Positions 9,261 through 62,851 of a DNA stretch of 64,000 bases are shown piece by piece. A program made the translations under genes and the position numbers. The DNA is taken from contig NC_043018.1 of NCBI RefSeq assembly GCF_006345805.1, forward strand, positions 8,060,001 through 8,124,000, given 5' to 3'. This DNA comes from Octopus sinensis (lineage: Eukaryota). The notes under the pieces were generated by a model. It ran no database searches. It saw only the letters and a list, made by a program, of their open reading frames with translations, and was not told the origin of the DNA. How positions within the stretch are numbered: the stretch's first letter is position 1; each line of letters starts with the position of its first letter.

Positions 9261-10463
9261 AAAGAAAAAAGAGCCCACTGTGCTTGTCCCCTACACTGCT
9301 TTTCATTAATGTAAAATAATAATAATCCTTTCTACTGAAAACACAAGGCCTGAAATAAGGGGGTGGAGGACTAGTTGATTACATCGACCCCAGTGTCCCA
9401 CTGGTACTTAATTTATCAACCATGAAAGGATGAAAGGCAAAGTCGACCTTGGTGGAATTTAAACTCAGAACATAGCAATGGGTGAAATACCTATTTCTTT
9501 ATTACCCACAAGGGGCTAAACACAGAGGGGACAAACAAGGACAGACATAGGTATTAAGTCGATTACATCGACCCCAGTGCGTAACTGGTACTTAATTTAT
9601 CGACCCCGAAAGGATGAAAGGCAAAGTCGACCTCGGCGGAATTTGAACTCGGAACATAACGGCAGACGAAATACTGCTAAGCATTTCGCCCGGCGTCCTA
9701 ACGTTTCTGCCAGCTCGCCGCCTCTTTAAGCATTTCACCAATGCTAACAATTCTGCCAGCTCACCACCTTAATAATAATACCAATAATAATAATGATAAA
9801 TGCCCTGATGTGGTACCAGGCTCTGGCCCTCATGGCTTTTGATCTTAACTGATTGGAAGTGTTATCATGTACATTGTTTTGTCTTGGTATAACAGATGGG
9901 CTACAGCAAATATTCTGCTCAGTACCACAAATCTGCTTTTTATTTTCTTGACCTTAACTGGTTGAGCATGTCCCTGAGTGGCTGACAATATGTGCATCTC
10001 TGATCACAAGCAGGAGCAGTTGGGGAGCATCATAGCCATGTTTTGAGAGGAATTCTTTGGGGACAGTGTTTCATTCCACATTGTTAACCTTTATTCAGGG
10101 TTTCGATTCCCAGACCGGGCATTGTGTTTATTGAGCGAAAACACCTAAAGCTCCACGAGGCTCCGGCAGGGGATGGTGGTGATCCCTGCTGTACTCTTTC
10201 ACCACAACTTTCTCTCACTCTTACTTCTTGTTTCTGTTGTACCTGTATTTCAAAGGGCCGGCCTCGTCACTCTCTGTGTCACGCTGAACATCCCCGAGAA
10301 CTACGTTAAGGGTACACGTGTCTGTGGAGTGCTCAGCCACTTACACGTTAATTTCACGAGCAGGCTGTTCCGTTGATTCGGATCAACCGGAACCCTCGTC
10401 GTCGTAACCGACGGAGTGCTTCCATCATCCAGTAATAATGAACCTTCTTCTCTTTTTTAAAAG

Positions 10464-10608
10464 GATGATGTGGAAGAAATGCGAGTAAGTAAGGCCATGC
10501 AAGAACAGGACCTCACTCGTCTGACGAATTATCTGACTGAACTGCAGAGCTTTAAAGAGAAACTGGACAAAACTGTGGAAGAGGAAATGAAAGAATTCGA
10601 ATTACTTG
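10464..10608 (+). CDS. NDC80: NDC80 exon (coiled coil)
   Basis: Acceptor TTTTTTAAAAG, DDVEEMRVSKAMQEQDLTRLTNYLTELQSFKEKLDKTVEEEMKEFELL, donor TTG|GTAAGA; 145 nt phase 0/1; absent from the ORF track (<60 aa). Confidence 0.85.
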
Positions 10609-12066
10609 GTAAGACAGTATCAGATGGTACCACTTGTTTTTAATGTCTGTATGTCGGTCTTTAACTGTGGAGGGAACCTGTGGTAGAGGTAGACCCAAGA
10701 AGACATGGGATGAGGTGGTGAAGCATGATCCTCAGGTGTTGAGTGTCACAGAGGCAATAACAAGTGATGGACATCATCATCATCATCGTTTAATGTCCGC
10801 TTTCCATGCTAGCATGGGTTGGACGGTTTTGACTGAGGACTGGCGAACCAGATGGCTGCACCAGGCTCCAGTCTTGATTTGGCAGAGTTTCTACAGCTGG
10901 ATGCCCTTCCTAACGCCAACCACTCCAAGAGTGTAGTGGGTGCTTTTTACGTGCCACCGGCATGGGAGCCAGTCAGGCGGTACTGGCAATGACCTCGCTT
11001 TAATCTTTTTACACATGCCACCAGCACAGGTGCCAGTAAGGTGACGTTGGTAACTATACCATATGGTGCCCACCTTTGGTAATTTGCAGTGCTTGAGAAG
11101 ACCTGTCAAGCCAAGTGAAATTGTTGTCATGGCCAGAGCTGGTGACATGTAAAAAAAAAAAAAAGGCACCCACTATACTCTCAGAGTGGTTGGCGTTAGG
11201 AGAGGCATCAAGCCATAGAAGCCAGGCCAAATCAGACTGGGGCCTGGTACAGCTCTTCAGTTTACCAGTCCCAGTTAAACCAACTAACCCATGCCAGCAG
11301 GGAAAACAGATTCTAAATGATGATGATGATGTCTTAGGTGATGAGCTGTTAATAGTATTATCATCTATTAACAACTCATCATCTGAGACGTGATGACATC
11401 ATCATGTCTTAGGGCTGCGTTGATCTTCAATGTTTCCGTTGGCAAGGTTTCCAGTGGCTGGATGCTCTTCCTATCACCAACCACTTTACAGAATGTACTG
11501 GATGCTCTTTTTCCATGGCTCCAATATGTTTATAAATTTTTAGATCATTAACTTCCATCTGATCGTGGCTGTTTGCCAGCCGTAGAAACATTGCCAGATC
11601 AGCCTGGTGCAGCCTTCTGGCTTCCCAGACCCCAGTTGACCCGTCCAACCCATGCCAGCATAGAAAGAGCATTCTAAACGAAGATGATGATGATGATGAA
11701 CTTCATCGTTAGAGATAAAAAAAAAAGAAGTTTTTCACAGGCCTGGCTGCCTGTTTAACAAGTTCATGCCCTAACCACATGGTTTCAAGTTCAATTCTCC
11801 TGCTTGGTACCTTGGGCAAAGCTTTTCTAAACTCTTGGGTTGACCAGTGCCTTGTGAGTAAAATTTGCTTTACAGAAATTGTATGGCAGCCTGTCAAGTG
11901 GATATCATTTGCTCCACATAGTCACACACACGTATATACACACTGAGTTCCATTCTCATACTCAGATATGCTACCTGTCACTTGATGTATACACTCCCAC
12001 ATACCCCCTCAGGCCAGATTAAGACCCATTGAGGTCCAAAGCACTTAAAAGATTTTGGTGGCTCCA

Positions 12067-12116
<50 letters not shown>

Positions 12117-12373
12117 GATGAGTGTATTTTTACCTTGTTAACAATTAACACGGAAAAAATAAATAAATAGTTACCAGGGCAGCAAAAATCTCACAAGTAA
12201 AGAGGTTGTAAGTCCTTGTTTATAAAGGTAGAAACTTCGTGTTTACGTGGAATATTTTGAATAATATATGAATAAATAAATGGAGTTAACGCAGGTGTAA
12301 TCAAATATTTTTACTTTCGACACATGTTTCGAAAATTCCACTGATACTATTCAAAAGAATAAATGGCATAAAC

Positions 12374-12513
12374 GGGCATCCAGCTGTAGAAACACTGCCA
12401 GATCTGACTGGCCTGGTGCAGCCTTCGGGCTCCCCAGACCCCAGTTGAACCGTCCAACCCATGCTAGCATGGAAAGCGGACGTTAAACAATGATGATGAT
12501 GATGATGATGATG
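12374..12513 (+). mobile_element. 5'-truncated (GAT)n-tailed SINE inserted in the left foldback arm
   Basis: GGGCATCCAGC...GTTAAACAATGATGATG; the right arm shows the empty site (TTGCATT^GTTTAT). Confidence 0.85.
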
Positions 12514-12840
12514 AATGCAATCTTCTCTTCAGGAAAGTGAAAAAAACGAAACTCGTCAATAAGACATTTTAGCAAAAAATGATGGATTTGTATAGCGATT
12601 GACTGAACGCTATTAATATTGCTTAAAAAAACGTTATATGATATATCATCATAAGTAACTAACAGAAACTTTTCCTTTATATTTAACATTCACTATTAAT
12701 ATCCCTACTCTTTCTGTTAGCTACTTATGACGTTATATCATATAACGTTTTTTTAAACAATATTAATAGCGTTCTGTCTATCGATATACAAATCCATCAT
12801 TTTTTGCTAAAATGTCTTATTGACGAGTTTCGTTTTTTTC

Positions 12841-12926
12841 ACTTTCCTGAGGAGAAGATTGCATTGTTTATACCATTTATTCTTTTGAATAGTATCAGTG
12901 GAATTTTCGAAACATGTGTCGAAAGT
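12841..12926 (+). ncRNA. Type I hammerhead ribozyme (Penelope-like element type)
   Basis: Stem I ACTTTC/GAAAGT; core CTGAGGA (12847-12853); long stem II opening GAAGATT/AATTTTC; GAAA (12909-12912); minimal stem III AC-ATGT-GT; GUC cleavage triplet 12918-12920. Confidence 0.8.
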
Positions 12927-12969
12927 AAAAATATTTGATTACACCTGCATTAAACTCCATTTATTTATT

Positions 12970-15421
<2,452 letters not shown>

Positions 15422-15587
15422 ATATACACATATATATATATGTAATTCAATACATAAACAATAATAAACCATAAAATAATTTATTTTTCAAAATGAAACA
15501 AAACTAACAACAAGATGGAAAATAATGTTTATTTTTGTATATTTCCATTTTATTTATATTTGAAATGTTTTTCTACTTTTTTTTTGT

Positions 15588-15665
15588 ATTGCAAAGCCTT
15601 TGATCAGTTTCTGAAAATTAATTTTAATTGCAAAGCCTTTGATCAGTTTCTGAAAATTAATTTTA
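15588..15665. repeat. ~39-bp tandem duplication
   Basis: TTGCAAAGCCTTTGATCAGTTTCTGAAAATTAATTTT x2. Confidence 0.88.
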
Positions 15666-16036
15666 CATAACACATCTGTTTCTATATATAGTAGAGATAA
15701 GGCATCCTGAACATTATTTTACCAGGTTTAAAATGATTTCTTTTGTGTCATGAACCATATACTATTTCTGTGGTGTCCCCTTCCTTCCCTTGATGCCCTA
15801 AGCATGTGCTTATTTTGCTTAACCCTTTAGCATTCAGCTTATTCTGTCAAATGAGATCCTTATTTATTCCCTTTGCTTTGAATTAATCCTGCATCATTTT
15901 GCAGCTTTGAGATTTTCATGATGTGATTGCTTATTTTTGGAAGGACATTGTGGGGTAGGTGTGAGAGGTTGCATCTGGCTGGTTTGATCATAAAACAGAG
16001 AATATTTAGGCCAGGTATGACCACTTTGAATGATTA

Positions 16037-16141
16037 AGATTTAATGGTTAATCCAGCCCTGTGTATCCCACAGATTTAATGGTTAATCCAGCACTGTGTA
16101 TCCCACAGATTTAATGGTTAATCCAGCACTGTGTATCCCAC
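16037..16141. repeat. 35-bp tandem triplication
   Basis: AGATTTAATGGTTAATCCAGCACTGTGTATCCCAC x3. Confidence 0.9.
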
Positions 16142-16276
16142 ACACACAAACTGACAATCTCTCTCTCTCTCTTTCCCTCTGTTACTTGCCTTCTCCCTCT
16201 CCCTTTCTCTATATTTCATCCCTCCACCCAAACCACATCCTAACCCTAAACTTTGATTCACATTTTTCTAAATCAG

Positions 16277-16482
16277 AGAGCGAACGTGAATCCCTGAAGG
16301 AACAGGTAAACTCCCTGCAGGTGATATTTGATAACCAAGAGTACAGCCCTGTGGATGTGGAGCGGATGAAGAAGGAGGAAGAACAGCTGCAGAGTCAGAT
16401 GGAAACGTTGGAGAAGGAAGATGCTGAATTAAGCCAAGAAATCTGGAACAAAGAACTTGATATTGGTAAAATTCAAGAAAAG
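16277..16482 (+). CDS. NDC80: NDC80 exon (coiled coil)
   Basis: (E)SERESLKEQVNSLQVIFDNQEYSPVDVERMKKEEEQLQSQMETLEKEDAELSQEIWNKELDIGKIQEK matches human IIDNQKYSVADIERI...LWNEEL; 206 nt phase 1/0, donor AAG|GTAAAT. Confidence 0.92.
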
Positions 16483-18180: not shown

Positions 18181-18848
18181 TCATCATCATCATCGTTTAA
18201 CGTCCGCTATCCATGGGTTGGACAGTTCAACTGGGGTCTGGGAAGCCAGAAGGCTGCATTAGGCCCAGTCTGATCTGGCAATGTTTCTACAGCTGGATGC
18301 CCTTCCTAACACCAACCACTCCGTGAGTGTAGTGGGTGCTTTTTATGTGCCACCAGCACAGGTGCCAGACAGAGCTGGCAAACGGCCATGCTCAGATGGT
18401 GTCTTTTTATGTGCCACCGACACAGGTGCCAGACGAGGCTGGCGAACGGCCACGCTCAGATGGTGTTTTTTTATGTGCCACCGACACAGGTGCCAGACGA
18501 GGCTGGCGAACGGCCACGTTCGGATGGTGTTTTTTTATGTGCCACCGACACAGGTGCCAGACGAGGCTGGCGAACGGCCACGCTCAGATGGTGTCTTTTT
18601 ATGTGCCACCGACACAGGTGCCAGACGAGGCTGGCGAACGGCCACGTTCAGATGGTGTTTTTTTATGTGCCACCGACACAGGTGCCAGACGAGGCTGGCG
18701 AACGGCCACGTTCGGATGGTGTTTTTTTATGTGCCACCGGCACAGGTGCCAGACGAGGCTGGCGAACGGCCACGCTCGGATGGTGTTTTTTTATGTGCCA
18801 CCGACACAGGTGCCAGACGAGGCTGGCGAATGGCCACGCTTGGATAGT
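18181..18848 (-). mobile_element. (GAT)n-tailed SINE carrying eight 64-bp tandem units
   Basis: CATCATCATCGTTTAACG tail end; units start at 18347, 18411, 18475, 18539, 18603, 18667, 18731, 18795. Further copies near 5990-6235, 7080-7370, 10770-10990, 11160-11330, 23280-23540, 29245-29690, 39499-39813, 47428-47680, 49190-49450, 55390-55630, 59690-59960, 60362-60670. Confidence 0.88.
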
Positions 18849-18920
18849 GTTATGACTCTTCACAATTAATAAACAATTTTTTTTCTCTTTTTCATCCCAT
18901 TTTTTTCATATTATTTCCAG

Positions 18921-19067
18921 TTAAACGAGAAATCTAAGCAATACAACAGACTGGCCCAAAATTTGCAGCTGATACCAACAACTGCAGAAAATGCTGGTGG
19001 CTTAGATTTTGAAATGAAACCAGGCCGTCTCTTTGACAGCACCCAGGAACAATTCAAAAATCATAAG
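18921..19067 (+). CDS. NDC80: NDC80 exon containing the Ndc80 loop
   Basis: LNEKSKQYNRLAQNLQLIPTTAENAGGLDFEMKPGRLFDSTQEQFKNHK vs human [33 protein letters not shown] acceptor, AAG|GTTAGT donor; 147 nt phase 0/0. Confidence 0.95.
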
Positions 19068-38265: not shown

Positions 38266-40460
38266 CAGTGTTTCCCGACCAGGAGTGTGAGTGCCCAGCC
38301 TTGCAGCCAGGCACTTAATTAGTATAATACTCTCCTGTGGTTTCTCCGTTTTCTCTTGCAACAAATTGCAAGAGAAAACGTAAATATTTTGTCGAGAAAA
38401 GGGAGAAATTCTACGTCGTGATATCTGGCTGCCTCAGAAGAATACGTTAACAAATCTATTAGCAACCAACAATAACGAAATGCAAAAACAATGTATAGTC
38501 AGGGAAGGGCAACATATGGAACGCCTTTGATCACACACGCTTGAGAAAATTACATTAACAGTGATTTGCAAGTAGCAATTGTCATAAATTCAATCGTGAA
38601 TATTGTTTCATGAAACTTTAAAAAAAACTTTATCTACCTAAACGGCTGATTGTGAAAACTTTATTCATTTTGTGAAACAAGCTATCTTTATTAGAGATCT
38701 GTTAATTGTGAAAATATATGAAGTAGATGTGAAATTAATATGATATCAATTTGAATATACATATGTATATACAATTGTGAGTAACGTTGCTCTTTTTAAC
38801 CACTTTTTGTGTGTTCAAATTAAGCTAGTCTAGCCTAGCTTAAAGCCTACCATTAAATTAGGGAATTAGAGACCAGCACCCGTCGCCGCGATTATGCATG
38901 TTACCAGTTTTTGTTTTTTTTATTAATATTATTATTATTACACTTATTTCCGGATTTAATGGTATTATTATCAGTGCGTTAGGTCCCCCGTTTTTCTTCC
39001 AGTTGGCCTTATCTATATTCTTATTTCCTTTTTCAAATCATAATTTAATCATCATGTCAACAAAAAAAAAGAAAGAAAGAAGAAAGAAATGGAATGATGT
39101 GCGTTTTGGTTTCACTTTGCACAGGGAAAAACAGGATTTGCAAAAGGCTACAATGCATGCTTTGCGATACTGTGTTTCCCAACGCAAATTTGAAGCTATC
39201 TAAGCTGCAAGAACACTTCAACAACCAGCACGATGGAGCTGATGCTGTAGGCTATGATGTTGAATCATTGAAAGCTAGAAGAGCCTGTTTTGGTTCTCGA
39301 GCAACCCTTCCTAAATTAGGTTTTGTATCTGTTGATAAACTACTGCTGATGGCTTCATACCTAGTAACGTATAAAGTAGCCAAGTCCTAGAAGCCCCATA
39401 CAATTGCAAAAGAGCTTATCAAACCATATGCATTAGAAATGGCAACAGTTGTTCTGGGAAAAGAACCAAGAAGGAAGCTGGAATTAGTGCTGCTATCATC
39501 ATCATTTAGCGTCCGCTTTCCATGCTAGCATGGGTTGGACGGTTCAACTGGGGTCTGTGAAGCTGGAAGGCTTCATCAGGCCCAGTCAGATCTGGCAGTG
39601 TTTCTACAGCTGGATGCCCTTCCTAACGCCAACCATTCCGTGAGTGTAGTGGGTGCTTTTTACGTGCCATCCGCACAGGTGCCAGACAGAGTTGGCAAAC
39701 GGCCACGAACGGATGGTGCTTTTACGTGTCACCGGCACGGGGCCAGGCGAGGCTGGCAATGGACACGAACGGATGGTGCTTTTTACGTGCCACCAACACG
39801 GGGGCCAGACAGAGCTATCAAATAATGTTTTTCAGAGCCTAATTGGTGATTTGAGTTTGGATATTTTGGATTAAGTTATCACATATATCAAGACTAGTCC
39901 CTTGAAAATCCCTCTTCAGTTGGACGAAACAACTGATGTTTCAAGTTGTAATCAGCTCATCGCATTAGTGAGGTATGTCCATGATGGCACCGTAAAGGAA
40001 GATTTCCTCTTCTGCAAAGATCTGAAAACAACCATGAAAGGAGATGTGTTCCAGTTTGTGAAAAAATTCTCTCCAAAGCATGATTTAGTAATCCAAATTA
40101 TTGGTTCTGTGTGTACTGATGGTGCTCCTGCTATGCTAGGAAATAAATCTGGATTTTCTCCACTGATGAAGTGGGAGATTTCACACTTGCAAGACACCCA
40201 TGGCTTCCCTCATTGTCATGCTTCGGCATTGAAAATGTTGCCTTCAAAGTTGAAAGTCCTCAACACTTCTATAAAGATCATCAACTTGATTAGGGGTCGC
40301 ACTCTGAACCACTGCCTTTTTAAGTTGATTTGAGAAGATCTTGGAAATGAACATACAGTTTTGCTTTTCCACACAGAAGTCCACTGGATTTCATGCAGGA
40401 GAGCTTTAACTCATTTCTTTGAACTGTGAGAAGAAATCAAGGCTTTTCTGGAGGAACGTG
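38266..40460 (+). mobile_element. Decayed hAT (Buster/Charlie-type) transposon, 3'-truncated
   Basis: 5' TIR CAGTGTTTCCCGACC preceded by CTCTAAAA (central TA); ATG 39054; BED-finger QCMLC..H, KPHTIAKELIKP, LQLDETTD, VCTDGAPAMLG; stops, frameshifts and a SINE at 39499-39813 (TSD GCTATCA). Confidence 0.9.
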
Positions 40461-43594: not shown

Positions 43595-44639
43595 ATAAAT
43601 TATAAAGTATATATATATATATATGATATGTCTTTTGATAGTGTGTGCGTGTATGTATATATATATACATACATACACACACACACTATCAAAAGATAGT
43701 CTCATCTAATTGCTCTCTGTCTCTTACCCTTCCCCCAAAATTCTTCAATTTTGACTTTTTTTCCCCTAACACTGACCCTAACCATAATGTCCGTAATTTT
43801 GTGCATATTTAGAAAAAAAATTCAGAAGTAAGTGAAAAATGAAGGAAATGGGATGGGGTAATTTAAAAATGCCTTTTTGTTTTGCACATTTGTATTCCCC
43901 GTTGCCGAAGAGTTGGGGGTTGTGTCGAAAAAATTTTTTGCTTCAGTCATTCGACTGCGGCCGTAGTGGGGCACCACCTTGAATGGCTTAGTCGAATAAA
44001 TCGTCCCAAGTAACTTATTCTCTAAGTCTGTCTCTTATTCCATCGGTTTCGTTTGTGAAACTGCTAATTCACGGAACGTCAACCAACCAGCACTGGTTGT
44101 CAAACAGTGGATGAGGGACACGTGTGTGTGTATATGTGGTAAGTAGCTTGCTTACGAACCACATGGTTCCGGGTTCAGTCCCACTGCGTGGAACCTTGGG
44201 CAAGTGTCTTCTACTATAGCCTCGGGCCGACCAAAGCCTTCTGAGTGGATTTGGTAGACGGAAACTGAAAGAAGCCCGTCGTATATATGTGTATGTTTGT
44301 GTGTCTGTGTTTGTCCCCCCAACATCGCTTGACAACCGATGCTGGTGTGTTTACGTCCCCGTCACTTAGCGGTTCGGCAAAAGAGACCGATAGAATAAGT
44401 ATTAGGCTTACAAAGAATATGTCCTGGGGTCGAGTTGCTCGATTAAAGGCGGTGCTCCAGCATGGCCGCAGTCAAATGACTGAAACACGTAAAAGAGAAA
44501 GGAGATTGGCACAGTTGTTGGAGCATCAGACTAATTGCTAATGATTTTTGTTCTGGTATTTTACATTCCGAGTTCAAATCCTGCTTAAATCAACTTTGCC
44601 TTTCGTCTAGGGTCATTAAAAATAAAGGACCAATTAACT

Positions 44640-45135
44640 ACTGGTGTTGAGCAGGGTCTGGAAGAGTAGAGACATCAGACTCGCTACCAAATGCAGATTG
44701 GTGAATGCAATTGTCTTCCCAATAGCAACATATGGATGCGATACCTGGACACTAAAGAAAGCTGACCAGAAGAGAATTAATGCATTCGAGCTTTGGTGTT
44801 GGAGAAGACTTTTACAGATTCCATGGACAGCGAGGCTCACCAATGGAGAAGTTCTTAAGCAGATAAGGCCAAAAATGTCGCTAGAAGCTGGGATCACCAA
44901 GCGTAGATTGGCATATTTCGGTCATGTTATGCGGAGAAAATCTCTGGAGAAGGACATCATGCTCGGAATGGTCAGTGGCAAGAGAGGAAGAGGCCGACCA
45001 AGAACCCGCTGGCTTGACACCATCAAGAGTGATACCGGAATGGACATAGCCAATCTGAAAGAAGTGGCCCAGGAGAGAACTGACTGGAGGACACTGATCC
45101 ATCGAGTAAATGAGAGTCGACTTTGACTGAGCGGA
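44640..45135 (+). mobile_element. RTE (BovB-like) LINE 3' fragment
   Basis: TKCRLVNAIVFPIATYGCDTWT...CWRRLLQIPWTAR...YFGHVMRR...GKRGRGRPRTRWLD. Confidence 0.92.
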
Positions 45136-45234: not shown

Positions 45235-45434
45235 GTTTCCAAAATCAGTGAAAATGGGGAGAACTGCCCCCATCACCATCTCTATCTGAAGACCAACGTG
45301 CCAAAATTGAACAGAATCGGTTAGAAGCCCTTGCTAAACGCCAAAAGAGTATCTCAGATGGTTTGTTGGTGGATGTTGGTGATTCCTGGTTCAAACTTCT
45401 GGAACCAGAAACCAAAAAAGATTATTTTCAATCG
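45235..45434 (+). CDS. UNG: UNG exon 2 (RPA-binding helix; apparent 1-nt deletion at C5 45267-45271)
   Basis: TTTCAG acceptor; VSKISENGENCP then, after a frame change, PSPSLSEDQRAKIEQNRLEALAKRQKSISDGLLVDVGDSWFKLLEPETKKDYFQS (human SPLSAEQLDRIQRNKAAAL...GESWKKHLSGEFGKPYFIK); 200 nt where phase 0/0 requires 201. Confidence 0.9.
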
Positions 45435-45780
45435 GTATTATTTATTTATTATGAGTTTTTTTCTTTCAATTTTTTTCTGCTCCTTTCTCCTAGCCAATTA
45501 ATTGTTCATGTCTTCCCAACACCTAGGGCAAAAAAAAAAACCTCACTGTATACATTAATAGGCCAAAGTCAAATAAAGTTTTGTAGAAAGAAGAAAAAAT
45601 TATCTATATAATAGGCGCAGGAGTGGCTGTGTGGTAAGAAGCTTGCTTACCAACCACATGGTTCCGAGTTCAGTCCCACTGCGTGGCACCTTGAGCAAGT
45701 GTCTTCTACTCTAGCCTTGGGCCGACTAAAGCCTTGTGAGTGGATTTGGTAAACGGAAACTGAAAGAAGCCCGTCGTATA

Positions 45781-48010: not shown

Positions 48011-48273
48011 TCTGTTCTGGTTCATTTAGAAAAATAAAAATTTATTTTATGGTTTATTTTTGTTTATATTTTGAATTGCATGTGTGTGTGTGGGCACCAA
48101 AATGTTCTAGGTGCTTAGGGCCTCTATAGGTCTTGATCTGGCCCTACCCACCCCTTCCGAAAGACTAAAAATTATACAAGTACAGCATTGATTTTCTGAA
48201 TGACTGGCTTTCCAAACCAAGTACAGTCACCTTGGACATCATGCTTTAAACAAATATTAAATTTACTTAAATA

Positions 48274-48745
48274 TGAAATGTAGGCACCTTAAATATGACA
48301 CGCAGGTACCTTAGACATGACACGCAGGTACCTTAGACACGACACGCAGGTACCTTATACATGGCATGCAGGTACCTTAGACACGTCACGCAGGTACCTT
48401 AGACACGTCACGCAGGTACCTTAGACACGACACGCAGGTACCTTATACATGGCACGCAGGTACCTTAGACACGTCACGCAGGTACCTTAGACACGTCACG
48501 CAGGTACCTTAGACACGGCACGCAGGTACCTTAGACACGGCAAGCAGGTACCTTAGACACGGCAAGCGGGTACCTTAGACACGGCAAGCGGGTACCTTAG
48601 ACACGGCACGCGGGTACCTTAGACACGGCACGCGGGTACCTTAGACACGGCACGCGGGTACCTTAGACACGGCACGCGGGTACCTTAGACATGACACGCA
48701 GGTACCTTAGACACGACACGCAGGTACCTTAAATATGAAATGCAG
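48274..48745. repeat. 22-bp minisatellite (~21 units)
   Basis: Consensus YGRCACGCRGGTACCTTAGACA; 20 units 48296-48735 plus degenerate edge units. Confidence 0.95.
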
Positions 48746-49002
48746 ATAGCAGTACATAAATATAAATATTACAAGTTTATTAATGCTGTCCTGTGCAAGA
48801 TACCGTTAAACAGGGATGCCCAGTTAACTAGCCTATTGGCCATGGGAATTTGAAGTCGCAGCTTGTAAATTAGTGCAGGTTATAAGAGGTTCTGGACCCT
48901 CTGTGTCTGAAAAGTCAGTGTTGCACCTGTATTTACTTGAGTAAATATGATGAGTTGTAAAATTCTTCCAAGAAACTCTTTGAGTTCCATTTCTATTTTC
49001 AG

Positions 49003-52689: not shown

Positions 52690-53390
52690 GGTGAGTGGGC
52701 TTGAGGATCAGCCGGGAAAAGACAAAAGTGCTGTGCATCAACAACAAGCAGGAAGAGCCAATCCCAATCGAGGGGGCACCTGTGGAGGACGTTGGTGAGT
52801 TTGTCTATCTTGGCAGCAAGATCAGAAAATCAGGTGGATCAGACGAGGACATCACGGCAAGAAGCAAGAAGGCTTGGCAAGCCTTCGCTATTCTTTGGCC
52901 GGTATGGAAGTCCACTGCCATCTCAACTCTGCTTATTTAGTTCATACGTAAAATCTGTGCTTTTGTATGGCTCTGAAACATGGAGAGGCACCTGCAGCAA
53001 CTACAAGAAGATCCAGACCTTCATCAACAAATGTCTCCGGCAGATCCTCCATCTGAAGTGGTTCAGCAGAGTGCCAAACACCGACCTGTGGGAAAGGGCC
53101 AACCAGGAACCCATACATATTCAGACTAGACAAAGGAAATGGAGATGGATCGGACACACACTGCGGAAAGAACCCTCAAATGTGACACGACAAGCACTTG
53201 ACTGGAACCAGCAGGGGAAAAGGAATCAAGGACGCCCAAAGCAGACATGGAAGCGGAGCATTTTGGACAAGCTCAGGACCACCGGCCTGACATGGGAAGC
53301 AGCCAAGAAACATGCCAATGACCACGGAAAATGGAAAACAACTGTTGAGGCCCTATGCTCCATAAGGGGCAAAAGGATTAAGAAGAGAGG
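52690..53390 (+). mobile_element. RTE LINE 3' fragment
   Basis: GLRISREKTK...FVYLGS; VKSVLLYGSETW...RWIGHTLRK...GRPKQTW, with a frameshift. Confidence 0.92.
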
Positions 53391-53674
53391 ACATTTGACA
53401 GAATAATCTGAATGCTAAAGGGTTAAACTAGTCATATCCAACCCAAAAATTCTATCTTATGTTTGAACCTGTCAGATTCAACTTCTCACACCTACCCTTC
53501 AATGTCATTCTGAAAATAAACAATCACATCATTGAAATTACAAAGCTATAAGTTAATACAGGATTAATTCAAAATAATTTAAATCTATAAGCTTTACATT
53601 TGACAGAATGCTAAAAGTTTAATCATTTAAAAATTTTTTTTTATTTATATTTTTGCATTTCATCTCTTCCTTAG

Positions 53675-59552: not shown

Positions 59553-61312
59553 CACATACATACTATAAAGTATATGGAAAGGAAAAAAATATATAGGTGT
59601 AGACGATCTTTAATTGCTTGGATTGTACCTGTGGACTTGAATGTTTGACATCCCTTTGAAGAATTTCGATCCTCACCTCCTTTGTGATGTCATCATCATC
59701 ACCGTTTAACATCCGCCTTCCATGATAGCATGGGTTGGACGATTTGACTGAGGACTGGTGAACCAGACGGCCGCACCAGGCTCCGATCTTGATCTGGCAG
59801 AGTTTCTACAGCTGGATGCCCTTCCTGACGCCAACCACTCCGAGAGTGTAGTGGGTGCTTTTCCATGCCACAGGCACGGGGGCCAGTAAGGCAGTACTGG
59901 CAACAACTGCGCTCGAATGTCTTTTCACACTCGAATGGTGCCATTTACATGCCACTGGCACGATATATACATACATATATATATCTATATATATGACGGG
60001 CTTCTACCAAATCCACTCACAAAGCTTTGGATTGATCTGAGGCTATAGTAGAAGACACTTGCCCAAGGTACCACACTGTGAGACTGAACCTGGTACCATG
60101 TGGTTGGGAAGCTAGCTTCTTACCACACAGCCATACATTGTTTAACATACACTTTTCCATGCTTGCATGGGTCAGATGGAATTTGTGGGGAGAGATTTTC
60201 TCCAGCCATATGCAATTCCTGTCACTAATTCTCGCCTGCTTCCAAGTAAGGTAATATTTCTCAATGGCCAGGCATGGTTTTCATGAATGTTTTTAAAATG
60301 AAGAATATTGCTTGTATGATAGTGACATTTATTTACAACAAATACCTGATATCAAGACAATTATCATCATCATCATCGTTTAACGTCCGTTTTCCGTGCT
60401 AGCACAGGTTGGACATTTTGACCGGCGTCTGGGAAGCCAGGAGGCTGCACCTGGCTCCAGTCTGATATGGCAGTGTTTCTACAGCTTGATGACCTTCCTA
60501 ACACCAACCACTCCGAGAGTGTAGTGGTTGCTTTTACGTGCCACCAGCATCGATCGGTTGGGGCTTTTTACGTGCCACCAGCACAGAAGCCAGTCAAGGC
60601 GGCGCTGGCATCAGCTACGTTCAGATGGTGCTTTTTACATGCCACCGGCACGGGTATCACAACTACAATTTCCATTTGATATTTATTAGGAGACACTAAT
60701 TCATACACATGTTCAATGGGATTCTTTCAGTTTCCATCTAAATCCATTCACAAGGCTTTGGTCAGCCTGGCACTATACACAGTAGAACTGAACCCAGAAC
60801 TAAGTTGTTTGGAAGCAAGCTTCTTAACCATACAGCCATTCCTGTGCCTCTGGTAAAATGGAATAAGCCTTCACAATCGCACTTTTATTCTGCTGTTTTC
60901 TGGACATACACCTATTTCTTTACTGTCCACAAGGGGCTAAACACAGAGGGGACAAACAAGGACAGACAAACGGATAAAGTCGATTATATTGACCCCAGTG
61001 CGTAACTGGTACTTATTTAATTGACCCCGAAAGGATGAAAGGCAAAGTCGACCTCGGCAGAATTTGAACTCAGAACATAACAGCATACGAAATACCGCTA
61101 AGCATTTTGCCCGGTGTGCTAACGATTCTGCCAGCTCACCGCCTTTTCTGGACATACAGAAATAATGAACGAAATAATATTTGTAGCTCTTGTTTTAAAT
61201 CGATTTGTTTTCACCATATTTAAGGCTAAATTTTCATGACATTTTGTGTGTTTCTCTTTTTCCATTAAATTCCATTCTGACTGAGTAATTACCTTTATCT
61301 TCTGATTGTCAG

Positions 61313-61491
61313 GTGTCTTACTTCTCAACTCCTGTCTCACTGTCCGAGCTTCACAGGCTAATTCTCACAAAGACCGTGGCTGGGAGCAACTGACCGATGC
61401 TGTTATCAGATGGCTTAATGATAATTCTTCTGCTCTTGTCTTTGTCCTATGGGGAGCATATGCTCAAAAGAAAGGTGCTTTCATAAACAAG
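61313..61491 (+). CDS. UNG: UNG exon 7 (LLLN uracil-specificity motif)
   Basis: (G)[59 protein letters not shown]; GTCAG acceptor, AAG|GTGAGG donor; 179 nt phase 1/0. Confidence 0.97.
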
Positions 61492-62024
61492 GTGAGGAAT
61501 ATACATCATTATTTTGGCTTTGGGCATCTCTTTTTACCTACTTCCAAAATGTGTGGAAATCATGTGTAGTAATTTCAAAGCTTAATTGTTTCCCAAATTG
61601 GAATTCTACTCGTATATCTTGGACAGTACTGTTGCTACACACCCAAACATTGGAGGTGCATGGCTTAGTGGTTATATATTAGAGGTTCACAGTCTGGTCA
61701 TTTTTAGTCCAATCATAAAACAGTAATTGGAAGCCCTGCAGAAAATGCATGGTAGCTGTCTGTTACAAAATGACAACAGGCACAGAATGATATTGCTTGT
61801 CAAAAACTTGTGGTGGTGAAAGTGTCACAGTTGCACTTGGTACAGCATTCTGGTTACTATGAAAACAAGGAAGGCTACAACTTTGTTGCTATGGAAACAG
61901 ACACCAATGTGAGATTTATGGCTATCTCTATAACGATGGCTTTCAATTGGCTAAAATTACCCAAGATTTTCAAACTTTAAAAGGTATTAACTTTATTAGT
62001 TTATGACAAAAATGAATTTCATTT

Positions 62025-62437: not shown

Positions 62438-62707
62438 TTTCCTTTTCATAATTTGCATACAAAACCAAATCAGTATAACCAAATTTTAAAAAATACGAAA
62501 TTTGACAGCAACTGAAGATCTGGTTGTGGGAATAGTAAAGACTTGTGTATTGGAATGGGAGAGTTGTAAAAGTGGTAAAGACTAGTATAACTGGAGGGGG
62601 AGGTTATGAGAAGGATAAAGATTTGGGGGTCATGTATTTATGGTAAAGATTTTATATTTCATTTTGCTGTTTTGTTTGATTTCTTTTTACTTTTTCTCTG
62701 CTTTCAG

Positions 62708-62851
62708 CAAAAACACTGCATCCTAAAAAGCGCCCACCCATCTCCTTTCTCAGCCAACAACGGGTTCTTTGGTTGCAAACATTTCTCCAAATGTAATGCC
62801 TACCTTTCAAAAAACAACAAAAAGACCATTGACTGGAAAAAAGTTCTGTAA
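62708..62851 (+). CDS. UNG: UNG exon 8 (HPSP intercalation loop, C-terminus)
   Basis: [50 protein letters not shown]; TTTCAG acceptor, phase 0. Confidence 0.97.

What the first reader, a model, noticed from the sequence alone, without database searches (positions are those of the whole stretch)
12841..12926. Intact type I hammerhead ribozyme on the sense strand of an NDC80 intron
Seen: every catalytic element is present. Stem I is ACUUUC/GAAAGU (6 bp) and the core is CUGAGGA. Stem II is long (GAAGAUU/AAUUUUC, then CAUUG/CAGUG, AUAC/GUAU, UAUUC/GAAUA), followed by GAAA, a 2-bp stem III with palindromic ACAUGU, and a GUC triplet predicting cleavage after C12920. Established: Penelope-like retroelements carry minimal type I hammerheads with short palindromic stem III that are thought to cleave as dimers. 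Inference: it is in the NDC80 sense orientation, so it is transcribed in the pre-mRNA of an essential kinetochore gene and could cut the 5.7-kb intron. The long stem II is atypical for minimal PLE hammerheads.
Basis: partly seen in the sequence, partly recalled or inferred. Interest (0 to 1): 0.7.

Follow-up and report, generated by a model that had tools for sequence, protein, structure and literature searches.

The report
Transposon-borne hammerhead ribozyme in octopus intron
A complete hammerhead self-cleaving RNA motif really does sit in an intron of the Octopus sinensis NDC80 gene, but it is one half of a young inverted pair of mobile-element fragments in a TA microsatellite, so it is most likely an ordinary transposon passenger and not a regulator of the gene.

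Summary
The motif is real. 12841-12926 (+) has every hammerhead core position: helix I of 6 bp, a G10.1-C11.1 pair opening a long helix II, a 2-bp helix III with a self-complementary loop, and a GUC cleavage triplet. It lies in the sense strand of a 5,668-nt NDC80 intron of Octopus sinensis. Structure-aware descriptors found nothing comparable in 500 simulated windows.

The motif is the right arm of a ~600-nt palindrome centred at 12689/12690. The left arm holds a second, inverted copy split by a SINE. The unit sits between two (TA)n arrays and is absent from the orthologous O. bimaculoides intron. Head-to-head 5'-truncated copies, a hammerhead near the 3' end and a (TA)n target match published Penelope-like-element (PLE) and retrozyme insertions.

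In the pre-mRNA, 85 of 86 motif nucleotides are predicted to pair with the upstream antisense arm, so cleavage of NDC80 RNA is unlikely.

No other family copy could be reached, so covariation is untested and chance in a foldback element is not excluded.

Verdict: a new member of a known kind, of low to moderate interest.

The parts
12841..12926 (+). Intact type I hammerhead motif. Helix I 12841-12846/12921-12926; core CUGAGGA 12847-12853; helix II with structured extension 12854-12908; GAAA 12909-12912; helix III plus loop 12912-12919; C17 at 12920. Predicted cleavage between 12920 and 12921.
   Evidence: Sequence; MFE fold; only descriptor hit in the window; 0 hits in 300 and 200 simulated windows.
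12690..12970 (+). Right arm of the palindrome: one ~280-nt AT-rich non-coding unit carrying the hammerhead about 45 nt from its outer (3') end.
   Evidence: Self-BLAST and alignment of the arms.
12514..12689 (-). Left arm, inner part (inverted copy). 12514-12538 is the 5' part of the second hammerhead on the minus strand, with core CUGAAGA.
   Evidence: pairing partners.
12252..12373 (-). Left arm, outer part (inverted copy). 12313-12373 is the 3' part of the second hammerhead on the minus strand.
   Evidence: 94-97% identity to 12866-12987; gap-free join across the SINE.
12374..12513 (-). SINE inserted into helix II of the left-arm hammerhead after the palindrome formed.
   Evidence: More than 15 copies of this SINE in the window at 83-92% identity, and 97% to a copy in L001; exact insertion point shown.
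12117..12251 (-). One-sided unique extension beyond the outer end of the left arm, with no counterpart after the right arm and no other copy in the window or loci.
12073..12116 (.). (TA)22 array flanking the insert on the left.
   Evidence: TRF.
12971..15441 (.). (TA)~1250 imperfect array flanking the insert on the right.
   Evidence: TRF.
10609..16276 (+). NDC80 intron that holds everything above. Flanking exons are 10464-10608 and 16277-16482.
   Evidence: Mapping of the O. sinensis NDC80 protein P0001 onto the window, with GT/AG boundaries; PDB match to human NDC80.

Best explanation
The motif is a genuine, retroelement-derived type I hammerhead. It is the ribozyme module near the 3' end of a short non-coding unit of the Penelope-like-element (PLE) / non-LTR-retrozyme kind.

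Two 5'-truncated copies of that unit integrated head to head into a (TA)n microsatellite inside an NDC80 intron. This happened in the O. sinensis lineage after the split from O. bimaculoides, roughly 6 My ago judging from arm divergence. A SINE later hit one copy.

In its home element the hammerhead would process multimeric or read-through element transcripts at GUC, alone or as a helix-III dimer with a tandem neighbour (inferred from the literature).

At this locus it is a passenger. The sense copy in the NDC80 pre-mRNA is expected to zip up co-transcriptionally with the upstream antisense arm into a ~300-bp hairpin, so self-cleavage of the intron should be negligible and without consequence for NDC80 (inferred from the fold prediction).

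Shown here: the motif, the palindrome, the SINE, the TA flanks, the absence in O. bimaculoides and the predicted sequestration. Inferred: membership of the PLE family, the native processing role and the lack of activity in situ.
For: - All core positions are present, with G10.1-C11.1 and a self-complementary helix III. Descriptor hits were 0 in 300 and 0 in 200 simulated windows.
- A second, inverted copy lies at 12313-12373 + 12514-12538. Within the hammerhead it differs only at N7 (G to A, the one free core position) and by A-U to G.U in helix II. Both changes are structure-neutral.
- The hammerheads read outward from the palindrome centre, about 45 nt from the outer ends. The unit lies between (TA)n arrays. 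It interrupts a repeat whose uninterrupted paralogue at 48014-48143 has only a short microsatellite there.
- These features match published PLE insertions: an inverted 5'-truncated copy adjacent, hammerheads near the 3' ends in pLTRs, a (TA)n target preference and an extension at only one end (PMC8557442). Pairs of minimal hammerheads 100-700 bp apart on opposite strands are also described (PMC4209133).
- O. vulgaris locus L003 carries a textbook PLE minimal hammerhead, also in a head-to-head inverted pair. PLEs are annotated in O. vulgaris (PMC13282606).
- The unit is absent from the O. bimaculoides orthologous intron.
- The arms are 95.8% identical. With the calibration quoted (JC 0.09 at about 25 My) that is about 6 My, younger than the 13-33 My species split.
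- The pre-mRNA fold pairs 85 of 86 hammerhead nucleotides with the antisense arm.
Against: - No third copy of the unit was found, so there is no family alignment and no covariation test. Searched: the window, about 63 kb of other octopus DNA (the part of L001 outside the window, plus L002 and L003), a pseudo-ORF protein search and two metagenome pattern scans.
- No PLE RT/GIY-YIG coding remnant lies nearby.
- No Rfam hammerhead model scores the motif.
- The published PLE minimal hammerhead has an extra nucleotide between A9 and 10.1. This motif lacks it.
- The one-sided extension is ~135 nt, against the published 30-40 bp.
- The hammerhead is not significantly better conserved between the arms than its flanks (2 differences in 86 nt against 9 in 178 nt).
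- The fold z-score of the isolated motif is weak (-1.48).
- The right arm alone is not a self-paired rod like retrozyme RNAs (z -0.75).
Confidence: 0.68

Rival explanations
1. Chance look-alike. The palindrome is a foldback/MITE-type DNA transposon or a local inverted duplication in AT-rich DNA. One arm happens to spell a hammerhead consensus that has never been used as a ribozyme.
For: - No further copies were found and there is no covariation evidence.
- Rfam gives no hit.
- Helix II is very long and no recognisable loop-loop contacts are present.
- TA flanks also suit TA-targeting DNA transposons.
- By rough scaling of the relaxed rate, I extrapolate a handful of chance motifs of this quality per 2.7-Gb genome.
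- The first stage read many windows, so selection could have picked out a chance motif.
Against: - Descriptor hits were 0 in 500 simulated windows.
- The G10.1-C11.1 pair and the self-complementary helix III are features not forced by the core pattern, and both are present.
- Both inter-arm differences inside the motif are structure-neutral.
- The outward orientation and near-terminal position of the motif match PLE copies.
- The one-sided extension makes the termini asymmetric, which a simple TIR element should not be.
- A second, unrelated PLE-type hammerhead, again in an inverted pair, turned up in only ~63 kb of other octopus DNA.
Confidence: 0.17
2. One reading: an active cis-acting ribozyme that cleaves the NDC80 pre-mRNA intron and so influences expression of an essential kinetochore gene.
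For: - The core is intact and in the sense strand.
- Helix III of 2 bp with a tetraloop is the form described as usual for invertebrate hammerheads, and a mussel retrozyme hammerhead cleaves as a single motif at ~0.1/min (PMC7229834).
- Intronic sense-strand hammerheads exist in amniotes (HH9/HH10; from my own knowledge).
Against: - Predicted sequestration in a -415 kcal/mol hairpin with the upstream antisense arm.
- Absent from the O. bimaculoides orthologue.
- No tandem partner on the same strand.
- Cutting an intron that is spliced out anyway has limited effect.
- Vertebrate retrozymes are reported as depleted from introns, which suggests selection against such activity (10.64898/2026.07.22.740005).
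Confidence: 0.04
3. The relevant product is the long intronic hairpin itself. It would be a ~300-bp dsRNA acting as an ADAR hyper-editing or small-RNA substrate, with the hammerhead irrelevant. This reading is compatible with a transposon origin.
For: - The arms are 88-97% complementary and fold at -415 kcal/mol.
- A-to-I editing correlates with dsRNA abundance across Metazoa, according to the title and abstract of PMC5625713 listed. I did not read that paper in full.
Against: No expression, editing or small-RNA data could be examined. Nothing singles this hairpin out among the many inverted repeats of this repeat-rich genome (1607 inverted pairs in the window).
Confidence: 0.09

Closest known systems
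Hammerheads in the pLTRs of Penelope-like elements (min-HHRs; Cervera & de la Pena 2014, PMC4209133; Craig et al. 2021, PMC8557442)
   Same: - Type I topology with a complete core and G10.1-C11.1.
- Enlarged helix II (7 bp before the first mismatch, against 6-8 bp published).
- Short self-complementary helix III.
- Position near the 3' end of a non-coding terminal region.
- Occurrence as a pair on opposite strands a few hundred bp apart.
- Head-to-head 5'-truncated copies in a (TA)n target, with an extension at one end only.
   Different: - No unpaired nucleotide between A9 and 10.1.
- Helix I is 6 bp (published 4-5 bp).
- Helix III has a 2-bp stem and a 4-nt loop, where published min-HHRs have none or 1 bp.
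- Helix II carries a 39-nt structured extension.
- No RT/GIY-YIG ORF is at hand.
- The extension is ~135 nt, not 30-40 bp.
Canonical type I hammerheads of metazoan non-LTR retrozymes (Cervera & de la Pena 2020, PMC7229834)
   Same: - Helix I of 6 bp.
- Helix III of 2 bp capped by a tetraloop, described as the usual invertebrate form.
- Carrier unit of about 300-400 nt with low G+C.
- A mollusc precedent: mussel hammerheads also lack the archetypal loop 1/loop 2 contacts.
   Different: - Retrozymes are direct tandem repeats. Here the two units are inverted and no direct repeat exists.
- Helix II is 7 bp plus an extension, not 4 bp plus a loop.
- The unit is not a self-paired rod.
Ultraconserved intronic hammerheads HH9/HH10 of amniotes (Rfam RF02275, RF02277; de la Pena & Garcia-Robles 2010; recalled from my own knowledge)
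   Same: A type I hammerhead in the sense strand of an intron of a protein-coding gene.
   Different: Those motifs are conserved at orthologous positions across distant species. This one is lineage-specific, absent from O. bimaculoides, embedded in a transposon palindrome, and scores with no Rfam model.

Membership tests
Hammerhead ribozyme (generic, type I) | Conserved core C3 U4 G5 A6 N7 G8 A9 / G12 A13 A14 / A15.1-U16.1 / H17, with three helices and helix I open | tested here: met
   Read directly from the sequence. Helices I and II are the MFE fold. It is the only descriptor hit in the window.
Hammerhead ribozyme (generic, type I) | Self-cleavage at H17 that depends on the core | not testable with these tools
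   Needs in vitro transcription or end mapping.
Hammerhead ribozyme (generic, type I) | Covariation of helices I-III among homologues | tested here: inconclusive
   Only two copies (the two arms) exist in the data. The two differences in the motif are N7 G/A and A-U to G.U, both neutral, and none is compensatory.
Rfam Hammerhead_1 / Hammerhead_3 / Hammerhead_II / HH9 / HH10 | Covariance-model score at or above the gathering threshold | tested here: not met
   No hammerhead model is listed at gathering thresholds or at E<=10 on 12700-13000. The same models also miss the minimal hammerhead in L003.
PLE minimal hammerhead (Cervera & de la Pena 2014) | G10.1-C11.1 pair and an enlarged helix II | tested here: met
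   G12854-C12908 opens a 7-bp helix; published features.
PLE minimal hammerhead (Cervera & de la Pena 2014) | [quoted passage not shown] | tested here: not met
   A12853 is followed directly by G12854, which pairs with C12908.
PLE minimal hammerhead (Cervera & de la Pena 2014) | Self-complementary 15.2-16.2 and loop 3, allowing a helix-III dimer | tested here: met
   ACAUGUGU pairs with itself over 8 bp including 2 G.U pairs, at -7.4 kcal/mol. A competing register scores -6.6, and a 24-nt self-duplex of the 3' half scores -22.8.
Penelope-like element insertion | ORF with a telomerase-like RT and a GIY-YIG endonuclease | tested here: not met
   tblastn of Poseidon_Ac against the window and loci found nothing. 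No ORF of that kind is present. Heavy 5' truncation is usual for PLEs, so this does not exclude a PLE origin.
Penelope-like element insertion | Inverted 5'-truncated copy adjacent, hammerhead near the 3' end, microsatellite target, extension at one end | tested here: met
   compared with PMC8557442. The length of the extension differs from the published 30-40 bp.
Metazoan non-LTR retrozyme | Direct tandem repeats of a 170-400-bp unit, each with a type I hammerhead | tested here: not met
   There is only an inverted pair and no direct copy in the window.
Metazoan non-LTR retrozyme | Expression as small, highly self-paired circular RNA | tested here: inconclusive
   Expression is not testable here. 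The arm alone folds no better than shuffles (z -0.75).
Conserved intronic hammerhead (HH9/HH10-like) | Presence at the orthologous intron position in related species | tested here: not met
   The O. bimaculoides intron lacks window 11783-15980. O. vulgaris has an assembly gap there.

The most novel reading that the evidence does not exclude
The sense-strand hammerhead escapes the hairpin some of the time, for example during transcription or after ADAR editing loosens the duplex. It would then cleave the NDC80 pre-mRNA within the intron, giving O. sinensis a lineage-specific, transposon-donated brake on an essential kinetochore gene. A weaker form of this reading is that the long helix II makes the motif a monomer-active variant not covered by current hammerhead descriptors or Rfam models.
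Probability: 0.04. Interest if true: 0.6.

Novelty: new member of a known kind. Interest (0 to 1): 0.2.

Why it matters
Hammerheads carried by Penelope-like elements and retrozymes are known in thousands of copies in many animal genomes. One more copy in an octopus intron does not change the picture.

Three things are of modest value.
- It is a concrete example in a cephalopod. None of the hammerhead papers I read described one.
- It shows that Rfam models miss this class of motif, both here and in O. vulgaris. Genome annotation of cephalopods will therefore under-report ribozymes.
- It is a clean, datable case of the PLE-style head-to-head insertion into a (TA)n array, which afterwards grew to about 2.5 kb inside an essential gene.

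The idea that it regulates NDC80 would be interesting, but the evidence here speaks against it.

Tried and rejected
- **Rfam.** The whole window at gathering thresholds and 12700-13000 at E<=10 listed no hammerhead. The only hit near significance was a weak snR75 C/D-box match (20 bits against a gathering score of 40), which I treat as noise. A control on the L003 minimal hammerhead was also negative.
- **Family copies.** Five searches found nothing.
  - Self-BLAST of the window at word size 7.
  - BLAST against the three octopus NDC80 loci.
  - A protein search with the stop-free 83-aa frame of the right arm, as a proxy for DNA copies.
  - Two exact-pattern scans of JGI metagenome contigs.
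- **Genome sampling.** I tried to sample more octopus genome through LINE RT homologues. The octopus hits carried no contigs. The JGI contig I compared (L004) is not octopus: only its LINE matched the window, at ~75%, with no SINE matches. L005 was not compared because the script failed.
- **PLE coding remnants.** tblastn with Poseidon_Ac found none.
- **O. vulgaris orthologue.** It cannot be used because the assembly has a 100-N gap that removes several NDC80 exons.
- **Assembly artefact.** I considered whether the palindrome is a long-read chimera and rejected it. The arms differ at about 4% of positions and only one arm holds a SINE.
- **Retrozyme-like rod.** The arm alone folds no better than shuffles, so this was rejected.
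- **Exon peptide 10461-10640.** On its own it gave no NDC80 hit in Pfam or PDB. The next exon did.

Full report
**Observation.** The sequence at 12841-12926 (+) is a complete type I hammerhead.
- Helix I is ACUUUC/GAAAGU.
- The core is CUGAGGA.
- Helix II opens with G12854-C12908 (G10.1-C11.1) and runs for 7 bp. It continues past a G/G mismatch into a 39-nt structured extension.
- GAAA follows at 12909-12912.
- Helix III is A-U plus C-G with loop AUGU.
- The GUC triplet puts the scissile bond between 12920 and 12921.

RNAfold returns helices I and II as the MFE and centroid structure of the isolated 86-mer. The energy is -18.1 kcal/mol, and the z-score is only -1.48 in this AT-rich sequence.

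Rfam lists no hammerhead family, at gathering thresholds over the whole window or at E<=10 on 12700-13000. That negative is uninformative. The same models also miss a textbook minimal hammerhead that I found in an O. vulgaris locus.

**Chance.** I wrote RNAmotif-style descriptors and ran them on first-order Markov simulations of the window.
- Relaxed form (helix I >=5, helix II >=4): 3 hits in 300 windows.
- Form matching this motif (helix I >=6, helix II >=7): 0 in 300.
- Form also requiring G10.1-C11.1 and a self-complementary helix III: 0 in 200.

In real octopus DNA, the window plus about 63 kb from three loci, the last descriptor finds exactly two distinct motifs: this one and the O. vulgaris one. 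By rough scaling I extrapolate a handful of chance motifs of this quality in a 2.7-Gb genome. Chance is therefore unlikely but not excluded by statistics alone.

**Gene context.** The peptide of the downstream ORF matches human NDC80 residues 339-413 (PDB 9n9g, E 3e-7). A query built from the window's exon pieces retrieved NDC80 of O. sinensis, O. bimaculoides and O. vulgaris. The O. sinensis locus L001 is 100% identical to the window, so the window is O. sinensis chromosome CM016880.1. Mapping the 608-aa protein gives exons 10464-10608 and 16277-16482 and a GT..AG intron at 10609-16276 of 5,668 nt.

The motif is the right arm of a palindrome centred at 12689/12690.
- The right arm is 12690-12987.
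- The left arm is 12514-12689 plus 12252-12373.
- A 140-nt SINE at 12374-12513 splits the left arm. This SINE has more than 15 copies in the window.

When the SINE is removed in silico, the left arm aligns without a gap across the insertion point. From 12711 to 12974 the arms differ at 11 of 264 positions, or 95.8% identity.

The left arm therefore carries a second hammerhead on the minus strand (12538-12514 and 12373-12313), broken in helix II by the SINE. Inside the hammerhead the arms differ only at N7 (G to A) and by A-U to G.U in helix II. Both changes are structure-neutral. The motif is not significantly better conserved than its flanks, however (2 of 86 against 9 of 178).

The divergence between the arms and the one-sided SINE rule out an assembly artefact.

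**The insert and its target.** The unit is bracketed by (TA)22 at 12073-12116 and an imperfect (TA)~1250 at 12971-15441. A ~135-nt unique extension (12117-12251) follows the outer end of the left arm only.

The sequences just outside the TA arrays (12012-12060 and 15440-15504) are contiguous in a paralogous repeat copy at 48014-48143, where only a short microsatellite separates them. The palindrome therefore sits inside a microsatellite that has since expanded.

In O. bimaculoides the orthologous intron is about 0.9 kb. Window 11783-15980 is replaced there by 113 nt of an unrelated SINE fragment.

In O. vulgaris a 100-N assembly gap removes this region and several exons. That is why its annotated protein has only 410 aa.

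Using the calibration quoted for octopus repeats (JC 0.09 at about 25 My; O. vulgaris/O. bimaculoides split 13-33 My; PMC13282606), 4.2% arm divergence corresponds to about 6 My. That fits an insertion after the split.

**Comparison with known systems.** Craig et al. describe PLE insertions as highly 5'-truncated, often with an inverted 5'-truncated copy immediately adjacent. They also report hammerheads in the pLTRs near the 3' ends, a bias for (TA)n targets in some clades, and an extension present at only one end (PMC8557442). Cervera and de la Pena report pairs of minimal hammerheads 100-700 bp apart on opposite strands, enlarged helix II, a conserved G10.1-C11.1 and a palindromic helix III (PMC4209133).

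The locus matches these points. It differs in four ways:
- there is no unpaired nucleotide after A9;
- helix I is 6 bp;
- helix III has a 2-bp stem with a tetraloop;
- the one-sided extension is longer than published.

The helix I and helix III features are those of the canonical invertebrate hammerheads of non-LTR retrozymes. Their units are 170-400 nt and AT-rich, and in mussel they lack the usual loop contacts yet cleave at ~0.1/min (PMC7229834). Retrozymes are direct tandem arrays, which this locus is not, and the arm alone is not a self-paired rod. A 2026 preprint argues that animal retrozymes derive from PLE pLTRs (10.64898/2026.07.22.740005), which would reconcile the mixed features.

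No PLE coding remnant is present.

The O. vulgaris locus L003 holds a textbook PLE minimal hammerhead at 12009-12054. It has a bulged A, a 6-bp helix II and a CG helix III, and it too sits in a head-to-head inverted pair with a different truncation point. Octopus genomes therefore carry such insertions.

**Activity at this locus.** Folding 12240-13000 as the pre-mRNA strand gives -415 kcal/mol. In that fold, 85 of 86 hammerhead nucleotides pair with the upstream antisense arm and none pairs within the ribozyme fold. The antisense arm is transcribed first and the helix can zip from the central loop, so sequestration should be co-transcriptional (inference).

A helix-III dimer is thermodynamically possible (8 bp, -7.4 kcal/mol). 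A competing register and a 24-nt near-palindrome covering the 3' half of the motif (-22.8 kcal/mol) favour inactive pairings. The only second copy is on the other strand and is interrupted.

**Conclusion.** The motif is most likely a genuine, transposon-derived hammerhead that is a passenger in the NDC80 intron (confidence about 0.68).

The main rival is a chance motif in an unrelated foldback element (about 0.17). It cannot be dismissed, because I could not reach any other genomic copy. Regulation of NDC80 by self-cleavage is unlikely (about 0.04). A dsRNA-based role of the hairpin is possible but untested (about 0.09).

Novelty: a new member of a known kind. Interest is low to moderate.

Noticed in passing
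L003 11944-12078 (hammerhead at 12009-12054, +): The O. vulgaris NDC80 locus holds a textbook PLE-type minimal hammerhead: GACAC/CUGAUGA/A/GGCUGG...CCAGCC/GAAA/CG/UU/GUGUU. A decayed antisense copy abuts it, forming a head-to-head palindrome. Rfam reports only miRNA-precursor-like hairpin hits there.
   Followed up: partly
window 12903-12926: The 3' half of the hammerhead (AUUUUCGAAACAUGUGUCGAAAGU) is a 24-nt near-palindrome, with 20 of 24 positions self-complementary and a self-duplex of -22.8 kcal/mol. Its register differs from the helix-III dimer register. It could trap dimers in an inactive form or be a protein-binding site of the element.
   Followed up: partly
L003 12894-12993: A 100-N assembly gap in O. 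vulgaris GCA_951406725.2 removes several NDC80 exons. The annotated protein (P0003, 410 aa) jumps from ...LTELIK to KEEEQLQ.... The gap coincides with the (TA)n/palindrome region in O. sinensis.
   Followed up: partly
window 45252-45440, 61306-61500, 62700-62848 (+): These look like exons of a uracil-DNA glycosylase gene downstream of NDC80. One piece gives a weak Pfam UDG match (E 7e-4). The others I recognised by eye only.
   Followed up: partly
window 16037-16142: A ~35-nt unit (atttaatggttaatccagcactgtgtatcccacag) is present three times in tandem upstream of the NDC80 exon that starts at 16277. O. bimaculoides has one copy. Each copy ends in a 3'-splice-site-like ...cccacag.
   Followed up: no
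window 39049-40330 (+); 44638-45123 (+); 52705-53403 (+): Transposon coding remnants. The first is a transposase-like pair of ORFs with no Pfam hit, which I took by eye to be hAT-like. The other two are C-terminal fragments of non-LTR retrotransposon RTs. Homologues of the last one carry RVT_1 and DUF6451 and are widespread in molluscs and in eukaryotic contigs of metagenomes.
   Followed up: partly
window 18211-18978 and 48178-48814: Tandem arrays with 64-nt and 22-nt periods. The 64-nt array extends from a SINE-like repeat and gives long spurious ORFs.
   Followed up: no
window 12807-12890 (+): A weak Rfam match to the yeast C/D-box snoRNA snR75 (20 bits, gathering score 40, E 0.034 for a 301-nt search) overlaps the 5' half of the hammerhead. 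I treat it as noise.
   Followed up: no
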